Positions 984 to 54,594 of a DNA stretch of 64,000 bases are shown piece by piece. A program made the position numbers and the translations under genes. Location of the stretch: positions 62,001 to 126,000 of the IMG/VR virus record IMGVR_UViG_3300042560_001323, one strand, 5' to 3'. The notes beneath the pieces were generated by a model. It ran no database searches. It was not told where the DNA came from and saw only the letters and a list, made by a program, of their open reading frames with translations. The first letter of the stretch is position 1, and each line of letters starts with the position of its first letter.

Positions 984-1044
984 TGTAAGCTCCTTACAAA
1001 TGGTTTATGTGTGGAGCGTCTATCGCTCCAGGATTATATAGTAG

Positions 1045-1192
1045 TAACAAAAACCAATAAAAGTTCAAAAACTCTATTGGTTTTCTAGACGCTTCATGGC
1101 AGATGCTAAGTGGTGATAATCACCGCTCAGTCTTAATTCCGCTCCACGTCCGTAATCTGCATACTCTGCAGATGAAAGTTCTTTATCGGTTA
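1045..1192 (-). ncRNA. Dispersed structured RNA cassette, copy 1 (most divergent)
   Basis: Shares core TACGGACGTGGAGCGGAATTAAGACT...TTAGCATCTGC..TGAAGCGTCT, a GAGTA-loop hairpin and a 3' hairpin with copies at 30.9, 31.5 and 50.6 kb, with compensatory changes. Confidence 0.8.
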
Positions 1193-1232
1193 GATTTCTC
1201 CAACCTTCTTTAAGAATGTGACAGATTCCGAA

Positions 1233-1292
1233 GTGGCACACAGAAAACAATCACATCGCAAATCCAATAGCTCGGGCTTCTTTCTTCTTGGT
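1233..1292 (-). repeat. 60-bp duplicate of the AAA ATPase 3' end and its downstream motif (2241-2300)
   Basis: 59/60 nt identical; encodes TKKKEARAIGFAM-stop out of context. Confidence 0.9.
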
Positions 1293-1341
1293 GGTGTGGT
1301 TAATGAGTTATTGTTAAAGAATTTCTTGGGTTTCATTTGTT

Positions 1342-2225: not shown

Positions 2226-2247
2226 GTGCCACTTCAAGCGGTGGCAC
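2226..2247. promoter_or_regulatory. Dyad motif GTGCCA-N10-TGGCAC (member of a genome-wide operator-like family)
   Basis: Perfect palindrome; related dyads at 1218, 3417, 20205, 37897, 39131, 48345, 49691, 54720, 57296, 57612, 58565. Confidence 0.65.
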
Positions 2248-2258
2248 ACAGAAAACAA

Positions 2259-3371
2259 TCACATCGCAAATCCAATAGCGCGGGCTTCTTTCTTCTTGGT
2301 ATTTTTTTGAGAGTTGAAAATCTCAGCAATTGTGAAGTTTTTCTCAGGAAGTTCAACTTCTACGCCTTGCTTCTCCGCAACAGCAATTGCCTCATCTTTA
2401 GTAAGTTGACGGAACTGTAGAACATCAAAGCAACGACCTGGACGAATAAGGGCTTGGTCAACATCACTGAGACTGGCCAGGTTTGTCGTAAAGATAATCT
2501 TTTTATCAGACGATGAGATTAGACCATCACCAGCATTAAGAAACTTGTGAATAGTCCGGTTTCCGCTCTCACGGGAAGTCAAATATGCATCGGCGTCCTC
2601 AAAGATAAGATAGTTTACCGAAGAGTCATTAATGAAACTACTCAGGAAATTGTCGCTTTTAAGAATTGCATCATCATAGGAGAGTAGGGCATTCTTTTTT
2701 AAATGATGTAGTAGCCCACGAATGAACGTCGTTTTACCGGTTCCAGGTGGTCCCTGGAGCAAAAGAATAGAGGCAGAAGATGAGTTAAACCGTTCATAAT
2801 ATTCCTCAAGGCTTTCACCATTGAGGAAAGGATACATCTCAGTGAAAGGAGTATTCTTTATCTCCAGCTCTTTTGTAACTTTAACCATTTTATGATTGTC
2901 ATCCGTAAAACACCAGTTAATCATACATTTTTGTTCTTCGGTGTATTTTTCAAAATGTTCATATAGAACTGCGATAAATTTTTCAATTTCTTCTTTATCT
3001 CCACGCATCATTACATTAAAACTACGAGTATTAGATGTAATTGCGAAGTTTACAATAATATTATCAAAAATCAAACTATATGTATTAGTCGGACAAGTTG
3101 TGAATACTTGTGGTTTAGGATCGGGAAAAATTGTAATAAAATCTTCAAATTTTTCCCGAAATGCTTCATTAACCCCATTGTTTATCTGGCATTTCGGGGC
3201 CTCTAGATACACGTCTTCTGTGTGTAAATTTTTTCCTGCGTTAATATAATTAACAATAAATTGAGCATTGATGGCATTACGAAGCTCGTAACTACCAAAA
3301 GAATTATTATTTTGATGAAGAGTTGGGGCGGGAATGGTAAGACGGGTTTCGGTCATCTTGATTAATTTCAA
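2259..3371 (-). CDS. AAA+ ATPase
   Basis: Walker A GPPGTGKT, Walker B LIFED, SRH-like ALIRPGRCFD; paralog of 34057-35130. Confidence 0.9.
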   Translation of the reverse strand: MKLIKMTETRLTIPAPTLHQNNNSFGSYELRNAINAQFIVNYINAGKNLHTEDVYLEAPKCQINNGVNEAFREKFEDFITIFPDPKPQVFTTCPTNTYSLIFDNIIVNFAITSNTRSFNVMMRGDKEEIEKFIAVLYEHFEKYTEEQKCMINWCFTDDNHKMVKVTKELEIKNTPFTEMYPFLNGESLEEYYERFNSSSASILLLQGPPGTGKTTFIRGLLHHLKKNALLSYDDAILKSDNFLSSFINDSSVNYLIFEDADAYLTSRESGNRTIHKFLNAGDGLISSSDKKIIFTTNLASLSDVDQALIRPGRCFDVLQFRQLTKDEAIAVAEKQGVEVELPEKNFTIAEIFNSQKNTKKKEARAIGFAM

Positions 3372-29898: not shown

Positions 29899-30212
29899 TT
29901 CTTTTTGTTTACCTCTTCTGTTTTCTTATTTTGTCTCCAAATTCTTGGACTAACTCTTCCATTAGAGTAATCAATTTTTTCAATCACTCCCCCGAACCGG
30001 TCATAATATAAATCAAAAATGTCAACCATTCTGGCTGCTCTACAAATGTCCACTTTTTCTCCTTCTTTATCCTTATAGTAAATTAAATAAGAATCCGACG
30101 GAAGGGCATAGGTATTGACATCTAAAGTGTTAATGAAAAGAAGTTCGCATCTATAAGATGTTGGAACGGCTTCTTGTTCAGGTAAAGACCAAGGTTCAAG
30201 GGTTGCGATCAC
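29895..30212 (-). CDS. Conserved cyanophage hypothetical protein
   Basis: LPSDSYLIYY...DI.RA..MVDIFD.YYD. Confidence 0.75.
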   Translation of the reverse strand: MIATLEPWSLPEQEAVPTSYRCELLFINTLDVNTYALPSDSYLIYYKDKEGEKVDICRAARMVDIFDLYYDRFGGVIEKIDYSNGRVSPRIWRQNKKTEEVNKKK

Positions 30213-30772
30213 ACTCTATTCCCCCATTGAATCTCGGGAAATGCTTCTTTAACAACATCAAAGGAAATGTTATACTTTTCTTGTAGCTTTTTATCTTTCA
30301 CAAAACAAATAATTTCAGCCTCACGAGGATGTAGACCTTGTAGCAGATTGATGAACATTGTTTCCCGGCGAATTCCAGAAAGGGAATCATTGCCACCACG
30401 GATAAAGTTAAAGAAATTAGTGTATTCCTTACGAATAGTTGTTCGGTTATTACTACCATAAGAATCTAACATCTCATCGGTTTTTAGTTGCTTATTCATA
30501 CTATCCGAAAAGGTTGTATCATTTCCAACAACGCCAATTTCTCTGGCATCGGCAAACGGTACATCACCCGGAGGAATTGCAGATTCTAAGCTTTGGTCAT
30601 AATTCCAAATGAATACTGCCATCATAGATGGGTCCTTATATTCTTGAAGAACTTCTACTTTTTTGGCATTGGAACGTTGTCTTTCAACCAAGTCAAAAAC
30701 TTCAAATAGAAATGGATTGGCTGGAAGTTTTTTAGGCGTAGTCACCTTCGTCGTCTTCGTCTGTGTCGTCAT
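30209..30772 (-). CDS. Conserved T4-like cyanophage protein
   Basis: LP.NPFLFEV...KKVEVLQ...RRETMFINLLQGLHP.EAEI. Confidence 0.85.
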   Translation of the reverse strand: MTTQTKTTKVTTPKKLPANPFLFEVFDLVERQRSNAKKVEVLQEYKDPSMMAVFIWNYDQSLESAIPPGDVPFADAREIGVVGNDTTFSDSMNKQLKTDEMLDSYGSNNRTTIRKEYTNFFNFIRGGNDSLSGIRRETMFINLLQGLHPREAEIICFVKDKKLQEKYNISFDVVKEAFPEIQWGNRV

Positions 30773-30825
30773 AATTTTGATCAAATGTTACTGCGTAAAG
30801 TATGTCTGGTTTGATAGGCCCGTCG
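30754..30825 (-). repeat. 72-bp duplicate of the 3' end of gene 31038-31259 (31057-31128)
   Basis: 66/72 identical; 5 of 6 differences are synonymous in the upstream gene's frame. Confidence 0.9.
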
Positions 30826-30831
30826 CTATTA

Positions 30832-30992
30832 TAGTAACAAAAACCAATAAGAGCCAAAAACTCTATTGATTTTATAGACGCTTCATAGCAGATGCTAAAT
30901 GGTAAATAACCTTTTTAGTCTTAATTCCGCTCCACGTCCGTAATCGGTGTACTCCACCGATACCCGAAAAGTATTAACTAGCCGAGCGTCTT
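30832..30992 (-). ncRNA. Dispersed structured RNA cassette, copy 2
   Basis: Core conserved with copies 1, 3 and 4; preceded by ATAAATA; ends in hairpin plus U tract. Confidence 0.85.
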
Positions 30993-30999
30993 TATTTAT
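30993..30999 (-). promoter_or_regulatory. T4-type late promoter ATAAATA
   Basis: Matches the TATAAATA-type late consensus directly 5' of RNA copy 2. Confidence 0.6.
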
Positions 31000-31037
31000 C
31001 TAACTTTTGTTTGTGGATAACTGAAAATACTCTATTC

Positions 31038-31259
31038 TCAGGCGTCCTTATAATCTTCTTCGTCTGTGTCGTCATAATTTTGGTCAAAAGTTACTGCATA
31101 AAGGATATCTGGTTTGATAGACCCGTCGTAGTTATACATCTCGGGGTGAAGTCTAGGAGCCGGGGGATAAAACTTGGATGCTATAAATCCAATAACACCA
31201 CCGAGCATTAAAAAGCAAAGAACTACTAGGACCGTTAGGGCAGTTATGAGGCCATACAT
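31038..31259 (-). CDS. Small membrane protein, conserved in cyanophages
   Basis: TM helix, then HPEMY..DG.I.PDIL.AV.F. Confidence 0.8.
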   Translation of the reverse strand: MYGLITALTVLVVLCFLMLGGVIGFIASKFYPPAPRLHPEMYNYDGSIKPDILYAVTFDQNYDDTDEEDYKDA

Positions 31260-31408
31260 TTTAGTTTTCTCCTGAATGTTTTTTTAGTTATTTTTAACTC
31301 AATCTTCAGGTGAATTTCTTTTGAGAAAAAGGAAACTACCTTAGCAATTCTAAAATTAAATAGTTCCTCCGTTTTTCTTTGCTTTTTATTGCGGAGCATA
31401 AACTCCAT
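31244..31408 (-). CDS. Hypothetical protein, duplicate of 31564-31749
   Basis: MEFMLRNKK...FNFRIAKVVSFFSKEIHLKIELKIT; the longer ORF-track start lies inside the RNA cassette. Confidence 0.6.
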   Translation of the reverse strand: MEFMLRNKKQRKTEELFNFRIAKVVSFFSKEIHLKIELKITKKTFRRKLKCMAS

Positions 31409-31413
31409 AGTAT

Positions 31414-31560
31414 GGAAAATCACTAAACTATAGTGATTTTCCAGACGCTTCACCGCAGATGCTAATTGGTATGAATAACCTATTAGTCTTAATTCCGCTC
31501 CACGTCTGTAATCGGTGTACTCCACCGATACCCGAAAAGCATTAACTAACCGAGCACAAT
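31414..31560 (-). ncRNA. Dispersed structured RNA cassette, copy 3
   Basis: Core conserved; 3' hairpin is a different but perfect 12-bp stem (GGAAAATCACTA/TAGTGATTTTCC). Confidence 0.85.
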
Positions 31561-31567
31561 TATTTAG
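31561..31567 (-). promoter_or_regulatory. T4-type late promoter CTAAATA
   Basis: Directly 5' of RNA copy 3. Confidence 0.6.
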
Positions 31568-31749
31568 GAAGGTCTTTCAGTTATTTTTAACTCAATTTTG
31601 AGATGAATTTCTTTTGAAAAAAAAGAAACTGCCTTAGAAATTCTAAAATTGAATAGTCCAGCCTTTTTTTCCTGTTTTTTAGAACGGAGCATATATTCAA
31701 TACCCCTATTTAGTTTTAACTTTGGCTCTCCTTCCTGGTCTTTTGTCAT
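31564..31749 (-). CDS. Conserved cyanophage hypothetical protein
   Basis: LNRGIEYMLR...FSKEIHLKIE. Confidence 0.7.
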   Translation of the reverse strand: MTKDQEGEPKLKLNRGIEYMLRSKKQEKKAGLFNFRISKAVSFFSKEIHLKIELKITERPS

Positions 31750-32059
31750 AAACATATTTCTCCGCGTCTTTAATAAATGCTTCCAGGTAGGTCTTAATAC
31801 GCCGAGCAAAAGGCTTTGAGAGGTGTCCATAAGCCTCTCTAAGGTAGCAGTGGCGAGGGTCTTGGCCACCCTCAAGGTATTCGGACAATTCTTGTATGGT
31901 TGTCTTTAGATTGACTACTGTGGGGCTACCCAAAAAATCCTGGGCATCAGTTCTTCTAAATTCTTTTTGCTGAAGATATGTATATAAATTAAGAATGAAC
32001 TTGCTCTCGGCGAAGGCAAAATCTACTGCTTTTTCTACATCAAGATAGACTTCTTCCAT
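31706..32059 (-). CDS. Conserved cyanophage hypothetical protein
   Basis: YLEGG.D...LREAYGHLSKP.AR.IK.YL. Confidence 0.8.
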   Translation of the reverse strand: MEEVYLDVEKAVDFAFAESKFILNLYTYLQQKEFRRTDAQDFLGSPTVVNLKTTIQELSEYLEGGQDPRHCYLREAYGHLSKPFARRIKTYLEAFIKDAEKYVYDKRPGRRAKVKTK

Positions 32060-48366: not shown

Positions 48367-48437
48367 TAGGAACATCGGGGATTGAACCCAAATCAACCGG
48401 TTATAGGCCGGTCGCTCTTCCATTGAGCTATGCTCCC
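48367..48437 (-). tRNA. trnI: tRNA-Ile, anticodon UAU
   Basis: Cloverleaf GGGAGCA/TGTTCCT; anticodon arm ACCGG-CCTATAA-CCGGT; T loop TTCAATC; no encoded CCA. Confidence 0.85.
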
Positions 48438-48939: not shown

Positions 48940-49212
48940 TCATTGAGTTAATTTATCTTCATATTCTTGAAAAATATTCATTTCCCAATAATCAAACTCT
49001 TCTTGAATTTTACGTTTTGCATCTTTGTATGATTTTTCGGTAAGACACCCCGGATTTTGATAAAGAATTTTCATTTGTTCAAGGGCATTTTGTAAGCCTT
49101 GGATATATTCAAAACTATATTTGCGGGCATTATATTGCTCTAAGGTCTCGGTTACTCCATCTGGGTAATAAAACTTTTCTGTTTGAGAATTAAATGTAAT
49201 TTGATTAGTCAT
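48940..49212 (-). CDS. Hypothetical protein
   Basis: 90 aa ORF; ATGA-coupled to copy C. Confidence 0.65.
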   Translation of the reverse strand: MTNQITFNSQTEKFYYPDGVTETLEQYNARKYSFEYIQGLQNALEQMKILYQNPGCLTEKSYKDAKRKIQEEFDYWEMNIFQEYEDKLTQ

Positions 49213-49631
49213 AAGTCGTTAAAAAGAGGAACGAACAACAAAGTCTTACCAGCATTCAATAAAGTGTGCATACCAATTAGTTCATAAGTTGCATACCCGG
49301 CGGCATACCCGGCGGCATACCCGGCGGCATCCCAGGCGGCATACGCGGCGGCATCCCAGGCGGCATCCCAGGCGGCATTCCTGGCGGCATCCCAGGCGGC
49401 ATCCCTGGCGGCATTCCTGGCGGCATACCTGGCGGCATACCAGGCGGCAGAGTCTAGGGCACGGTAGCGGCGGGCAACTTCATTCCATTGGTCGGCAGTA
49501 AGACCATCCATAAACCACCAGAAGTTAAGGACGGTTTCGTAGTTTGGTCCTAGAAAGTTTTGTGGACTTGTAAGAGCTTCAGGGTTTTGAAGTTCGTTGG
49601 AGAAGTTTTGGTGTGTTTTGGAAATTGGCAT
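49209..49631 (-). CDS. Ala-Ala-X-X repeat protein family, copy C
   Basis: Near-identical flanks to copies A and B; 13 tandem 12-bp units. Confidence 0.8.
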
Positions 49632-50476: not shown

Positions 50477-50491
50477 TATAGTCTTTTTGAA

Positions 50492-50653
50492 TAGTAACAA
50501 AAACCAATAAGAGTCAAAAACTCTATTGATTTTCTAGACGCTTCATAGCAGATGCTAAATGGTTTAAATAACCTTTTAGTCTTAATTCCACTCCACGTCT
50601 GTAATCGGTGTACTCCACCAATACCCGAAAAGCATTAACTAACCGGGCACAAT
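50492..50653 (-). ncRNA. Dispersed structured RNA cassette, copy 4
   Basis: Core conserved with copies 1-3; C-G to U-G compatible changes; CTAAATA at 50654-50660 directly upstream. Confidence 0.85.
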
Positions 50654-50663
50654 TATTTAGGTC

Positions 50664-53749: not shown

Positions 53750-53822
53750 CGGCCAATAGGAGATTTGAACTCCTGTAACCTACTAGACATGTAGGTGTCC
53801 TAGACCACTAGACGAATTGGCC
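53750..53822 (-). tRNA. trnD: tRNA-Asp, anticodon GUC
   Basis: GGCCAAT/ATTGGCC acceptor; anticodon arm CCTAC-ATGTCTA-GTAGG; T loop TTCAAAT. Confidence 0.88.
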
Positions 53823-54311: not shown

Positions 54312-54594
54312 CACCCCGTGAGGGCTACGATCCCCCGATCTACTGCTTAGCGTACCACTATGGTTTTCACCACCACCACATTTAGTGTTTGTGGTCTGGA
54401 CCATCCCTTCACCATATTTCTTAAGAACTTAGGTGCTTCCCGTCTGGTCTCTACACGTTCAAGATTTCTCTTGCTTCGCTCGGGATTGCCATTTTAAAGG
54501 TTTCCCCGAATTTGAGAAGTTACATTCATAGAGTTTCCCCTATGGCGCTCCATCAGTTTAAGGCAGTTGCTTTATCCGGCTAAGCTAACGGGGC
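54312..54594 (-). tRNA. trnR: tRNA-Arg(UCU) interrupted by a group I intron
   Basis: Exons 54594-54560 and 54350-54312 splice to ACTGC-CTTCTAA-GCAGT; acceptor GCCCCGT/ACGGGGT. Confidence 0.88.
54351..54559 (-). mobile_element. Group I intron, 209 nt, no ORF
   Basis: Follows a U, ends in G; core P AAATTCGGGGAAA, Q AATCCCGAGC, R GTAGAGACCA, S AAGGGATGGTCC (P7 GACCA/TGGTC). Confidence 0.88.

What the first reader, a model, noticed from the sequence alone, without database searches (positions are those of the whole stretch)
30754..31128. RNA cassette copy 2 lies between two versions of a gene's 3' end (integration-like signature)
Seen: 72 bp at the 3' end of gene 31038-31259 is repeated beyond the cassette (66/72 identical, 5 of 6 changes synonymous). 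The downstream copy still provides the overlapping start codon of the next core gene (30772). Known: integrative elements and some homing cassettes carry a replacement copy of the target's end to keep it intact. Inference: replacement 3' end + late promoter + RNA + terminator moved as one unit, i.e. a protein-less mobile RNA cassette.
Basis: partly seen in the sequence, partly recalled or inferred. Interest (0 to 1): 0.65.

Follow-up and report, generated by a model that had tools for sequence, protein, structure and literature searches.

The report
Mini TnpB guide-RNA element in phage
The "RNA cassette" is a 168-bp protein-less remnant of this T4-like phage's own TnpB (RNA-guided nuclease) transposon, inserted inside a small gene that stays whole because a diverged spare copy of its last 28 codons sits in front of the insert; this looks like a natural footprint of RNA-guided homing between phages.

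Summary

The cassette is not a new kind of RNA gene. It is a miniature, ORF-less derivative (left end fused to right end) of an IS200/IS605-type TnpB element. The 243-kb genome holds four intact tnpB copies and seven derivatives. The "RNA" is the omega-RNA scaffold, with covarying helices, and the resident gene end just after it would be its guide.

The neighbouring copy R1 has the same layout around a small gene. So does a full-length element in another viral contig. Other copies are plain insertions.

The unit (spare end, cassette, resident end) is nearly identical in a second contig whose flanks differ by about 6%, so it moved as a block.

Sequence mosaics place an exchange point 13-27 nt from the right end, which by my recollection is where TnpB cuts. 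I infer TnpB-triggered homing with an immune spare gene end. This is untested, and no transposase or integrase is encoded.

The parts
31038..31259 (-). g73: 73-aa membrane-type protein gene, intact; its last 28 conserved codons are the upstream ('spare') copy
   Evidence: ORF list; orthologues in L014-L019; no Pfam match
31054..31136 (-). D3b: upstream copy of the gene end, 84% identical to the empty-site relative L019; non-resident states from nt 27 onward
31038..31053 (-). New tail and stop codon of g73 (…EEDYKDA*), which replaces the ancestral tail (…DDEGDYA*)
31011..31037 (-). Filler of unknown origin between the g73 stop and the left end; no match elsewhere in the genome or in the fetched loci
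30831..31010 (-). R2: mini TnpB element (left end with a T4-late-promoter-like ATAAATA and a hairpin, fused to the right end); no ORF
30864..30962 (-). Omega-RNA-type scaffold inside R2 (helices P1-P4); covariance-model hit of 108 bits
30815..30830 (-). Inferred 16-nt guide: the first bases after the right end, which are also the start of the resident gene-end copy
   Evidence: Position inferred by analogy with ISDra2 reRNA (PMC13565253); sequence comparisons
30751..30833 (-). D3a: downstream, resident-like copy of the g73 3' end; it holds the start of g191
30209..30772 (-). g191: DUF6433 gene whose ATG lies in the downstream copy
31407..31574 (-). R1: second mini element with the same internal deletion junction
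31575..31702 (-). D1a: upstream diverged copy of small gene g51 (42 aa with a new tail), 81% identical to L019
31282..31409 (-). D1b: downstream resident copy of g51 (ORF 31244-31399), 96% identical to L019; its first 16 nt would be the R1 guide
50491..50663 (-). R3: third mini element, a plain insertion upstream of a Dps-like gene with no flank duplication
1041..1217 (-). Copy A: right-end-only remnant that keeps the last ~45 codons of tnpB, out of context

Best explanation
Shown: cassette copy 2 (R2, window 30831-31010, minus strand) is a miniature non-autonomous derivative of an IS200/IS605-type TnpB element. About 50 nt of the left end (late-promoter-like motif plus hairpin) is fused to about 120 nt of the right end, which carries the omega-RNA scaffold. 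The same phage genome holds four intact tnpB copies. R2 lies inside g73 directly after ...ATGTAT. g73 stays complete because a second, diverged copy of its last 28 conserved codons, with a new 6-codon tail and stop, lies upstream of the left end. The resident end lies downstream of the right end, still starts g191, and is where an omega-RNA guide would be read from.

Inferred: TnpB made from the intact copies is loaded in trans with RNAs transcribed from the mini elements. It cuts matching, unoccupied alleles in co-infecting relatives about 15-21 nt past the insertion point. Recombinational repair from the occupied genome then copies the block across. In an aberrant repair, both broken ends were extended on the donor and joined with filler at the left end. 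That repair left the target duplicated. Such products are the ones that survive when the site lies in a coding region, because the gene is restored. The upstream copy is protected from the element's own guide by mismatches near the insertion point. R1 (gene g51) and a full-length element in contig L101 are further instances.
For: Identity of the element:
- There are 10 strong copies and 1 weak copy in the genome.
- In five copies the sequence is the 3' end of a ~400-aa ORF with HTH_OrfB_IS605, OrfB_IS605 and Cas12f1-like_TNB domains.
- The best solved relative is ISDra2 TnpB, E 4e-75.
- Conserved left and right ends bound ~1336-bp units.
- The same deletion junction occurs in R1, R2, R3 and L011.

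RNA structure: 28 pairs are 98.7% paired, against 33-50% when the partners are slid. Seven pairs carry compensatory changes, and 0/500 shuffles reach the observed covariation score.

Empty sites: L019 and L015-L018 have a single gene end.

The unit moves: between the window and L014 there are only 3 mismatches from 31225 to 30714, against 6.4% divergence overall; the binomial test on the 498-nt stretch 30707-31205 (5 mismatches) gave P about 2e-9.

The copies diverged as working genes: synonymous changes are 7/10 (D3) and 9/17 (D1), combined P about 4e-4.

Mosaic: the first 13 nt after the right end are non-resident and the rest of the downstream copy is resident-like. The upstream copy shows the reverse pattern, with the switch at nt 13-27.

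Guides: the R1 guide matches the empty allele of L019 at 15/16 but its own upstream copy at only 12/16. The R2 guide matches its own upstream copy at 12/16.

Recurrence: L101 has a replacement gene tail, filler, a full element, then the original end.
Against:
- The hairpin and U-run just before the right end could stop transcripts before the guide.
- The TAM is only loosely defined: GT[AG]T at 4 of 5 mapped sites.
- The R2 guide has no well-matching empty allele among the sampled relatives (11/16 to L019).
- The origin of the filler is unknown.
- First arrival at each site needs a transposase that the phage does not encode.
- The mosaic and mismatch-enrichment tests rest on few sites (P about 0.015-0.05).
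- Only one other contig carries the R2 composite.
- Near-identity of a tract can also arise from ordinary phage recombination.
Confidence: 0.5

Rival explanations
1. Campbell-type integration. A small DNA circle holding the mini element plus a stretch of a diverged allele of the target gene recombined once with the resident gene through the phage's own homologous recombination. This leaves the insert between two chimeric copies of the target. TnpB plays no part.
For: Insert-between-direct-repeats is the classic outcome of a single crossover with a circle. The reciprocal mosaic of the two copies fits it as well as it fits the break model. A separate 61-nt gene-end repeat also flanks a three-gene module near copy A, so such events seem to happen in this genome.
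Against: It does not explain three things: why the downstream repeat starts exactly at the element's right end in R1, R2 and L101; why the exchange point falls 13-27 nt from that end; or why the upstream copies carry extra changes next to the insertion point. No source for such a circle is evident.
Confidence: 0.2
2. Local duplication plus an inert relic. The mini elements are dead remnants, the gene-end copies arose in place by replication slippage or unequal crossing-over, and nothing moves as a unit any more.
For: Only R1 and R2, which are neighbours, show long duplications among the 18 copies examined. No transposase is encoded.
Against: - The upstream copies are further from the downstream ones (82-88%) than the downstream ones are from relative L019 (88-96%).
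- The differences are biased to synonymous sites.
- At three synonymous sites D3b shares its state with the outgroup L016 while D3a shares its state with L019.
- The block is near-identical in a second contig with diverged flanks.
- RNA helices are kept by compensatory changes in ORF-less copies.
Confidence: 0.12
3. Domesticated regulatory cassette. The mini element is kept because its late-type promoter and hairpin reset transcription of the downstream genes (g191; g51-g73; dps). The RNA itself has no guide function.
For: NTAAATA behaves like a promoter in this genome: 56 of 218 copies lie 12-60 nt upstream of ORF starts, against 4-8% for control heptamers. R3 sits where relatives have the dps late promoter.
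Against: A promoter role would not need the P1-P4 scaffold to be conserved, with its invariant core and compensatory pairs, in the ORF-less copies. This role can coexist with the main explanation.
Confidence: 0.1
4. Integrase- or HUH-driven integrative element that carries a replacement target end.
For: The layout resembles elements that integrate into the 3' ends of genes and restore them.
Against: The complete genome has no tyrosine integrase, serine recombinase or Y1 HUH transposase. The ends are IS200/IS605-like hairpin ends, not att sites. The repeats are 82-88% identical rather than an identical core.
Confidence: 0.04

Closest known systems
ISDra2-type IS200/IS605 TnpB-omegaRNA (OMEGA) elements
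   Same: The TnpB domain set and full-length similarity to ISDra2 TnpB. The RNA scaffold overlaps the tnpB 3' end and the right end. Both ends have subterminal hairpins. Insertion is after a short T-ending motif, and plain insertions have no target duplication. The general properties of the family are taken from PMC13565253.
   Different: The elements sit in a lytic T4-like phage with no TnpA. A T4-late-type promoter motif lies in the left end. The site motif is GT[AG]T-like rather than TTGAT. Some copies sit between duplicated gene ends, whereas the family by definition makes no duplication.
PATE-like, ORF-less IS200/IS605 derivatives that encode omega-RNAs used by TnpB in trans (Meers et al. 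2023, PMC10055086)
   Same: Left and right ends are kept and the coding region is lost. Several copies with one deletion junction sit at different loci (R1, R2, R3, L011). Intact tnpB copies are present elsewhere in the same genome.
   Different: These were described in bacterial chromosomes. Here they are in a phage, each apparently has its own promoter, and two are embedded in duplicated coding sequence.
Intronless homing by free-standing endonucleases of T4-like phages (SegF and others), and the 'transposon non-restorative homing' proposed for co-infecting phages (PMC13565253)
   Same: The nuclease would cut the unoccupied allele of a co-infecting relative, and repair would copy the element together with flanking markers. 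A near-identical tract within diverged flanks is the expected co-conversion footprint.
   Different: Recognition would be by a guide RNA supplied from a separate protein-less locus. The homing unit carries a spare copy of the gene end it interrupts.
Integrative elements that restore the 3' end of their target gene (for example tRNA-gene integrating prophages and islands; from my own knowledge)
   Same: The insert is flanked by two versions of the target's 3' end, and the upstream version keeps the gene functional.
   Different: There is no integrase and no identical att core. The repeats are diverged coding sequence and the element ends are transposon ends.
Synthetic 'home-and-rescue' CRISPR gene drives with a recoded rescue copy of the target gene end (from my own knowledge; not checked in the library)
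   Same: The order of parts is the same: a cleavage-immune recoded gene end, then a guide-RNA cassette, then the original target sequence.
   Different: This one is natural, the nuclease is encoded elsewhere in the genome, and function is unproven.

Membership tests
IS200/IS605-family TnpB/omega-RNA element | Encodes TnpB (HTH, RuvC-type OrfB_IS605 and zinc-ribbon TNB domains) | tested here: met
   Met for the family: four intact 401-407-aa ORFs and one truncated ORF in the genome. R2 itself has no ORF (34 codons without a start), so it is a derivative and not an autonomous member.
IS200/IS605-family TnpB/omega-RNA element | Structured RNA scaffold overlapping the tnpB 3' end and right end, conserved by covariation | tested here: met
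   28 pairs in 4 helices, 98.7% paired, 7 pairs with compensatory changes, and 0/500 shuffles reach the score. All four window copies score 108-118 bits with the model.
IS200/IS605-family TnpB/omega-RNA element | Conserved left and right ends with subterminal hairpins and precise boundaries at different loci | tested here: met
   The right end stops at ...TTACTAT (or C/A) in all copies, followed by unrelated flanks. The left-end motif and hairpin are shared.
IS200/IS605-family TnpB/omega-RNA element | Insertion 3' of a fixed short motif (TAM) without target-site duplication | tested here: inconclusive
   Mapped empty sites end in TGTAT, GGTGT, TGTGT, TGTAT and ATATT. Plain insertions have no duplication. 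R1, R2 and L101 are flanked by 128-, 83- and ~16-nt repeats, which canonical transposition does not make.
IS200/IS605-family TnpB/omega-RNA element | Partner TnpA (Y1 HUH, or serine recombinase in IS607) | tested here: not met
   No PF01797 or PF00239 match in the complete 243-kb genome, and the controls responded. Most tnpB elements in bacteria also lack tnpA (PMC10055086).
IS200/IS605-family TnpB/omega-RNA element | RNA-guided cleavage of TAM-plus-guide-matched DNA | not testable with these tools
   The GIDLG, VEDL and DRDxNA motifs are present in the ORFs. Assigning them to the RuvC D/E/D triad rests on my own knowledge.
PATE-like non-autonomous derivative | Both ends kept, no ORF, several copies at separate loci, autonomous relatives present | tested here: met
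   R1, R2, R3 and L011 share one deletion junction and sit at four different loci.
Integrase-type integrative element with replacement gene end | Site-specific recombinase and an identical att core flanking the insert | tested here: not met
   No PF00589 or PF00239 match. The repeats are 82-88% identical over 83-128 nt.
Rfam RNA families | Match to a curated covariance model | tested here: not met
   There is no hit at the cassettes at gathering threshold, and nothing below E 0.5 in 30600-31800.

The most novel reading that the evidence does not exclude
The composite (immune spare gene end, promoter-driven guide-RNA mini element, original gene end serving as guide) is a natural 'home-and-rescue' RNA-guided drive. 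Protein-less guide cassettes would parasitise TnpB made elsewhere in a lytic phage genome, cut unoccupied alleles of conserved genes in co-infecting relatives, and spread without harming the gene they interrupt. As a side effect, they may serve the phage as programmable weapons against competitors.
Probability: 0.3. Interest if true: 0.85.

Novelty: new variant of a known kind. Interest (0 to 1): 0.62.

Why it matters
TnpB genes are common in phage records: 436 of 50,697 records have a match, mostly annotated as 'transposase'. What they do there is an open question. The review I read treats RNA-guided homing between co-infecting phages as theoretically possible (PMC13565253).

This locus offers matched filled and empty alleles, guide-target pairs with defined mismatches (15/16 to a relative, 12/16 to self), and an exchange point at the expected cut zone. 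Together these make the idea directly testable with a handful of constructs.

If confirmed, this would show that guide RNAs can become independent selfish units in viruses. It would also show that nature arrived at the 'recoded rescue' design used in engineered gene drives. If not confirmed, the finding remains a clean example of a transposon remnant tolerated inside a gene through duplication of the gene end.

Tried and rejected
- Rfam: no family matches the cassettes, at gathering threshold or in an E-value scan.
- Metagenome scans: the mini-specific 31-mer found nothing. The 19-mer found only one related full-length element and distant TnpB families, and no further mini elements.
- Search for a donor lineage:
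  - A degenerate pattern for the new g73 tail hit only unrelated genes.
  - A profile of the small gene g51 found only the two contigs already known.
  - BLAST of the filler found nothing.
- Prokaryote genomes: the closest TnpB relatives reach only 36-42% identity, so no host source or partner transposase was identified.
- A general ~20-nt similarity between the left and right flanks of the other copies looked suggestive by eye (L095, L109) but is not significant (permutation P 0.078).
- The simple terminator scan does not call the terminal hairpin.
- R3 has no direct empty-site relative with the same neighbours. Only distant relatives give the right-hand junction.
- I dropped the idea that the cassette is a stand-alone small-RNA gene once the ORF extension showed it to be the tnpB 3' end.

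Full report
**The observation**

All coordinates are read 5'->3' on the minus strand. The locus runs in this order:
- g117 (32059-31706)
- D1a (31702-31575)
- cassette R1 (31574-31407)
- D1b (31409-31282)
- g73 (31259-31038), which includes D3b (31136-31054)
- 27 nt of filler
- cassette R2 (31010-30831)
- D3a (30833-30751)
- g191 (ATG at 30772)

D3a and D3b are 73/83 identical. The flank-to-flank alignment score is 58, against at most 13 in shuffles. Over codons 42-69 there are 7 synonymous and 3 non-synonymous differing codons. The ATG at 30772 lies in the downstream copy and opens a DUF6433 protein.

**What the cassette is**

A core motif of the cassette occurs ten times in the whole genome. 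That genome is a 243,166-bp virus record with terminal repeats, and the window is bases 62001-126000 of it. It encodes a T4-type Gp23 capsid protein.

Extending the reading frame through the core showed that in five copies the "RNA" is the last ~45 codons of a ~400-aa ORF plus the sequence just after it. That ORF has HTH_OrfB_IS605, OrfB_IS605 and Cas12f1-like_TNB domains. It aligns over its full length with ISDra2 TnpB at E 4e-75. Four copies are intact and one is truncated.

The intact copies lie in ~1336-bp units with shared ends. The left end holds TAAATAA followed by a hairpin, and the right end stops at ...TTACTAT.

R1, R2 and R3 are these two ends joined by one and the same internal deletion. 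So is a copy in viral contig L011. Copy A of the window (1041-1217) is a right-end-only remnant. A covariance model finds the ten copies at 108-121 bits. It also finds a weak eleventh copy, which is a differently deleted remnant at the locus occupied in L011.

The cassette is therefore a PATE-like, ORF-less derivative of a TnpB element. Such derivatives, carrying omega-RNAs that need TnpB in trans, have been noted in bacteria (PMC10055086).

**The RNA**

Across 17 distinct copies the consensus fold has four helices and 28 pairs:
- 98.7% of cells are paired, against 33-50% when the partners are slid.
- Seven pairs carry compensatory double changes.
- No shuffle out of 500 reaches the observed covariation score.

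In helix P1 the mini elements carry U-A where the coding copies carry C-G. In the TnpB frame these are two amino-acid changes, so base pairing is what is being conserved, not the protein. No Rfam family matches.

The scan does not call it, and four relatives lack its 3' half.

The "late promoter" reading is reasonable. NTAAATA lies 12-60 nt upstream of ORF starts in 56 of 218 cases, against 4-8% for control heptamers.

**Empty sites**

Eighty relatives of g191 were fetched. The closest one without a cassette is L019, and L015-L018 lack it too. All five have g117, one copy of D1, g73 and g191 contiguous, with g73 overlapping the g191 start exactly as in the window's downstream copy.

The R2 site is ...ATGTAT|AAC... 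and the R1 site is ...GGTGT|GGAG.... That condition is not met.

The downstream copies look resident: D1b is 96% and D3a 88% identical to L019. The upstream copies are the odd ones: D1a is 81% and D3b 84% identical. The upstream g73 copy ends in a new tail (…EEDYKDA*) in place of …DDEGDYA*.

**D1 is a gene too**

D1 encodes a small protein that is conserved in all five relatives. In L015-L017 its stop codon overlaps the g73 start, and in the window's D1b the ORF ends 13 nt inside g73. R1 therefore repeats the R2 layout: a copy of the gene with a new tail, then the mini element, then the resident gene.

**A third instance, and plain insertions**

- Contig L101 carries a full-length element five codons before the end of another gene, after ...TGTAT. 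The upstream gene has a replacement tail (…ELEFSG* against …ELEWN* in this genome, which is empty at that site). About 44 nt of filler follows, then the element, then the original end and the next gene's ATG. About 16 nt of target are present on both sides, and the upstream copy has a 5-nt deletion.
- Contigs L099 and L100 carry an element 22 nt away, after ...TGTGT.
- R3 shows no duplication, and the long-repeat scan found none at the other copies.
- A weak ~20-nt flank resemblance in some copies is not significant (P 0.078).

The duplication is therefore recurrent, and all three cases have the insertion point inside or immediately upstream of a small conserved gene. It is not a product of the basic insertion step, consistent with the family making no target duplications (PMC13565253).

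**Evidence that the block moves as a unit**

Contig L010/L014 has the same R2 composite. Window and contig differ at 6.4% of positions overall. From 31225 to 30714 they differ at only three positions, and 335 nt (31048-30714) are identical. A binomial test on the 498-nt stretch 30707-31205 (5 mismatches) gave P about 2e-9. The tract spans the spare end, filler, R2, the resident end and the first 60 nt of g191. This is what co-conversion around a homing element would leave.

**Origin of the two copies**

The copies differ mostly at synonymous sites: 7/10 differing codons for D3 and 9/17 for D1. Combined, P is about 4e-4, assuming 27% synonymous changes by chance. So they diverged while each was a working gene, not as gene and decaying relic.

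At three synonymous sites D3b shares its state with L016 while D3a shares its state with L019.

Site by site, the downstream D3 copy is non-resident at nt 3 and 13 after the right end and resident-like at nt 27, 36, 45, 51 and 78. The upstream copy shows the reverse. In D1 the single site where the upstream copy matches L019 is nt 6.

All three such sites fall within the first 20 nt, out of 29 informative sites of which 8 lie there. By my own arithmetic on the table, the hypergeometric P is about 0.015. The exchange point therefore lies 13-27 nt from the right end. From my recollection of work on ISDra2 TnpB, cleavage falls 15-21 nt from the TAM, which is the same zone.

**Guides**

If, as in ISDra2, about 16 nt after the right end form the guide (PMC13565253), the guides compare as follows:
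- The R1 guide matches the empty allele of L019 at 15/16 but its own upstream copy at 12/16.
- The R2 guide matches its own upstream copy at 12/16 and L019 at 11/16.
- The R3 guide matches a distant relative's empty site at 15/16.

The changes in the upstream copies cluster next to the insertion point: nt 3-5 in D3b, nt 1, 4 and 6 in D1a, and a deletion of nt 4-9 in L101. A TAM-proximal seed would be disabled by changes at these positions.

**Enzymes**

The complete genome has no Y1 transposase, no serine recombinase and no tyrosine integrase, and the controls responded in each search. The only candidate nuclease for this element is TnpB. The closest prokaryotic TnpB relatives reach only 36-42% identity. 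TnpB homologues occur in 436 cultured-phage records, all but one below 60% identity.

**Mechanism**

What is shown:
- the identity of the element
- its structured RNA
- the insertion and its exact junctions
- the recurrence of the layout
- block-wise sharing with a second contig
- the mosaic of the two gene-end copies

What I infer is a sequence of events:
1. TnpB from the intact copies, loaded with RNA from a mini element, cuts an unoccupied allele in a co-infecting relative.
2. The left broken end, which still carries about 20 nt of target, primes on the donor's right-end flank and copies more of the gene.
3. The right broken end copies back through the element.
4. The two extended ends are joined with filler at the left end.

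The product has the element between two reciprocal chimeras of the target. When the site lies in a coding region, only such products keep the gene, so they are the ones that survive and are seen. The upstream copy retains the site motif plus target, so it must then escape the element's own guide. Once formed, the composite can home as a block.

A single crossover with a small circle would give the same mosaic without TnpB, and it is my main rival. First arrival at each site still needs a transposase, perhaps a host one.

**Limits**

The site motif is loose, the filler is unexplained, and no donor lineage was found. The positional statistics rest on few sites. In L011 the 20 nt after the right end are a synonymous variant of codons 5-11 of the gene that starts 1 nt further on. 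I cannot fit that case into the model.

Noticed in passing
window 2241-2299 and 1233-1293 (minus strand): The last 12 codons of a 370-aa AAA-ATPase-like gene, plus the first half of its downstream hairpin, are repeated (60 of 61 identical) about 1 kb further on. The second copy lies directly upstream of the tnpB remnant of copy A. Three small ORFs lie between the two copies, so this is another insert flanked by two versions of a gene end.
   Followed up: partly
L011:4500-4560 (minus strand), contig IMGVR_UViG_3300032305_000724: In this contig the 20 nt right after a mini element's right end are a near-copy (18/20, both changes synonymous) of codons 5-11 of the structural gene that starts 1 nt further on. 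The resident target is preceded by GTAG rather than GT[AG]T. This is unexplained.
   Followed up: partly
G000:C1:200128-200235 (outside the window): A weak eleventh covariance-model hit (23 bits) is a differently deleted left-end/right-end remnant. It lies at the same locus that holds the mini element in L011.
   Followed up: partly
window 30732-30857 (minus strand): The g73 reading frame stays open from a TTG inside the terminal hairpin of R2 through the downstream gene-end copy (41 codons). I could not judge whether it is translated, for example to keep coupling to g191.
   Followed up: no
window 54376-54570 (minus strand): Rfam group I intron match (55 bits, above the gathering score), so another class of mobile element is present in the same window. 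tRNA genes lie at 48367-48437 and 53750-53822.
   Followed up: no
window 49209-49631 (minus strand): A 140-aa ORF whose C-terminal half consists of degenerate AARxAAWDAA-type repeats.
   Followed up: no
G000:C1 about 143150-143290 (outside the window), versus L099-L101 and L012: Two different full-length tnpB insertions, 22 nt apart (after TGTGT and after TGTAT), occupy the same gene junction in different viral contigs. This genome is empty at that junction.
   Followed up: yes
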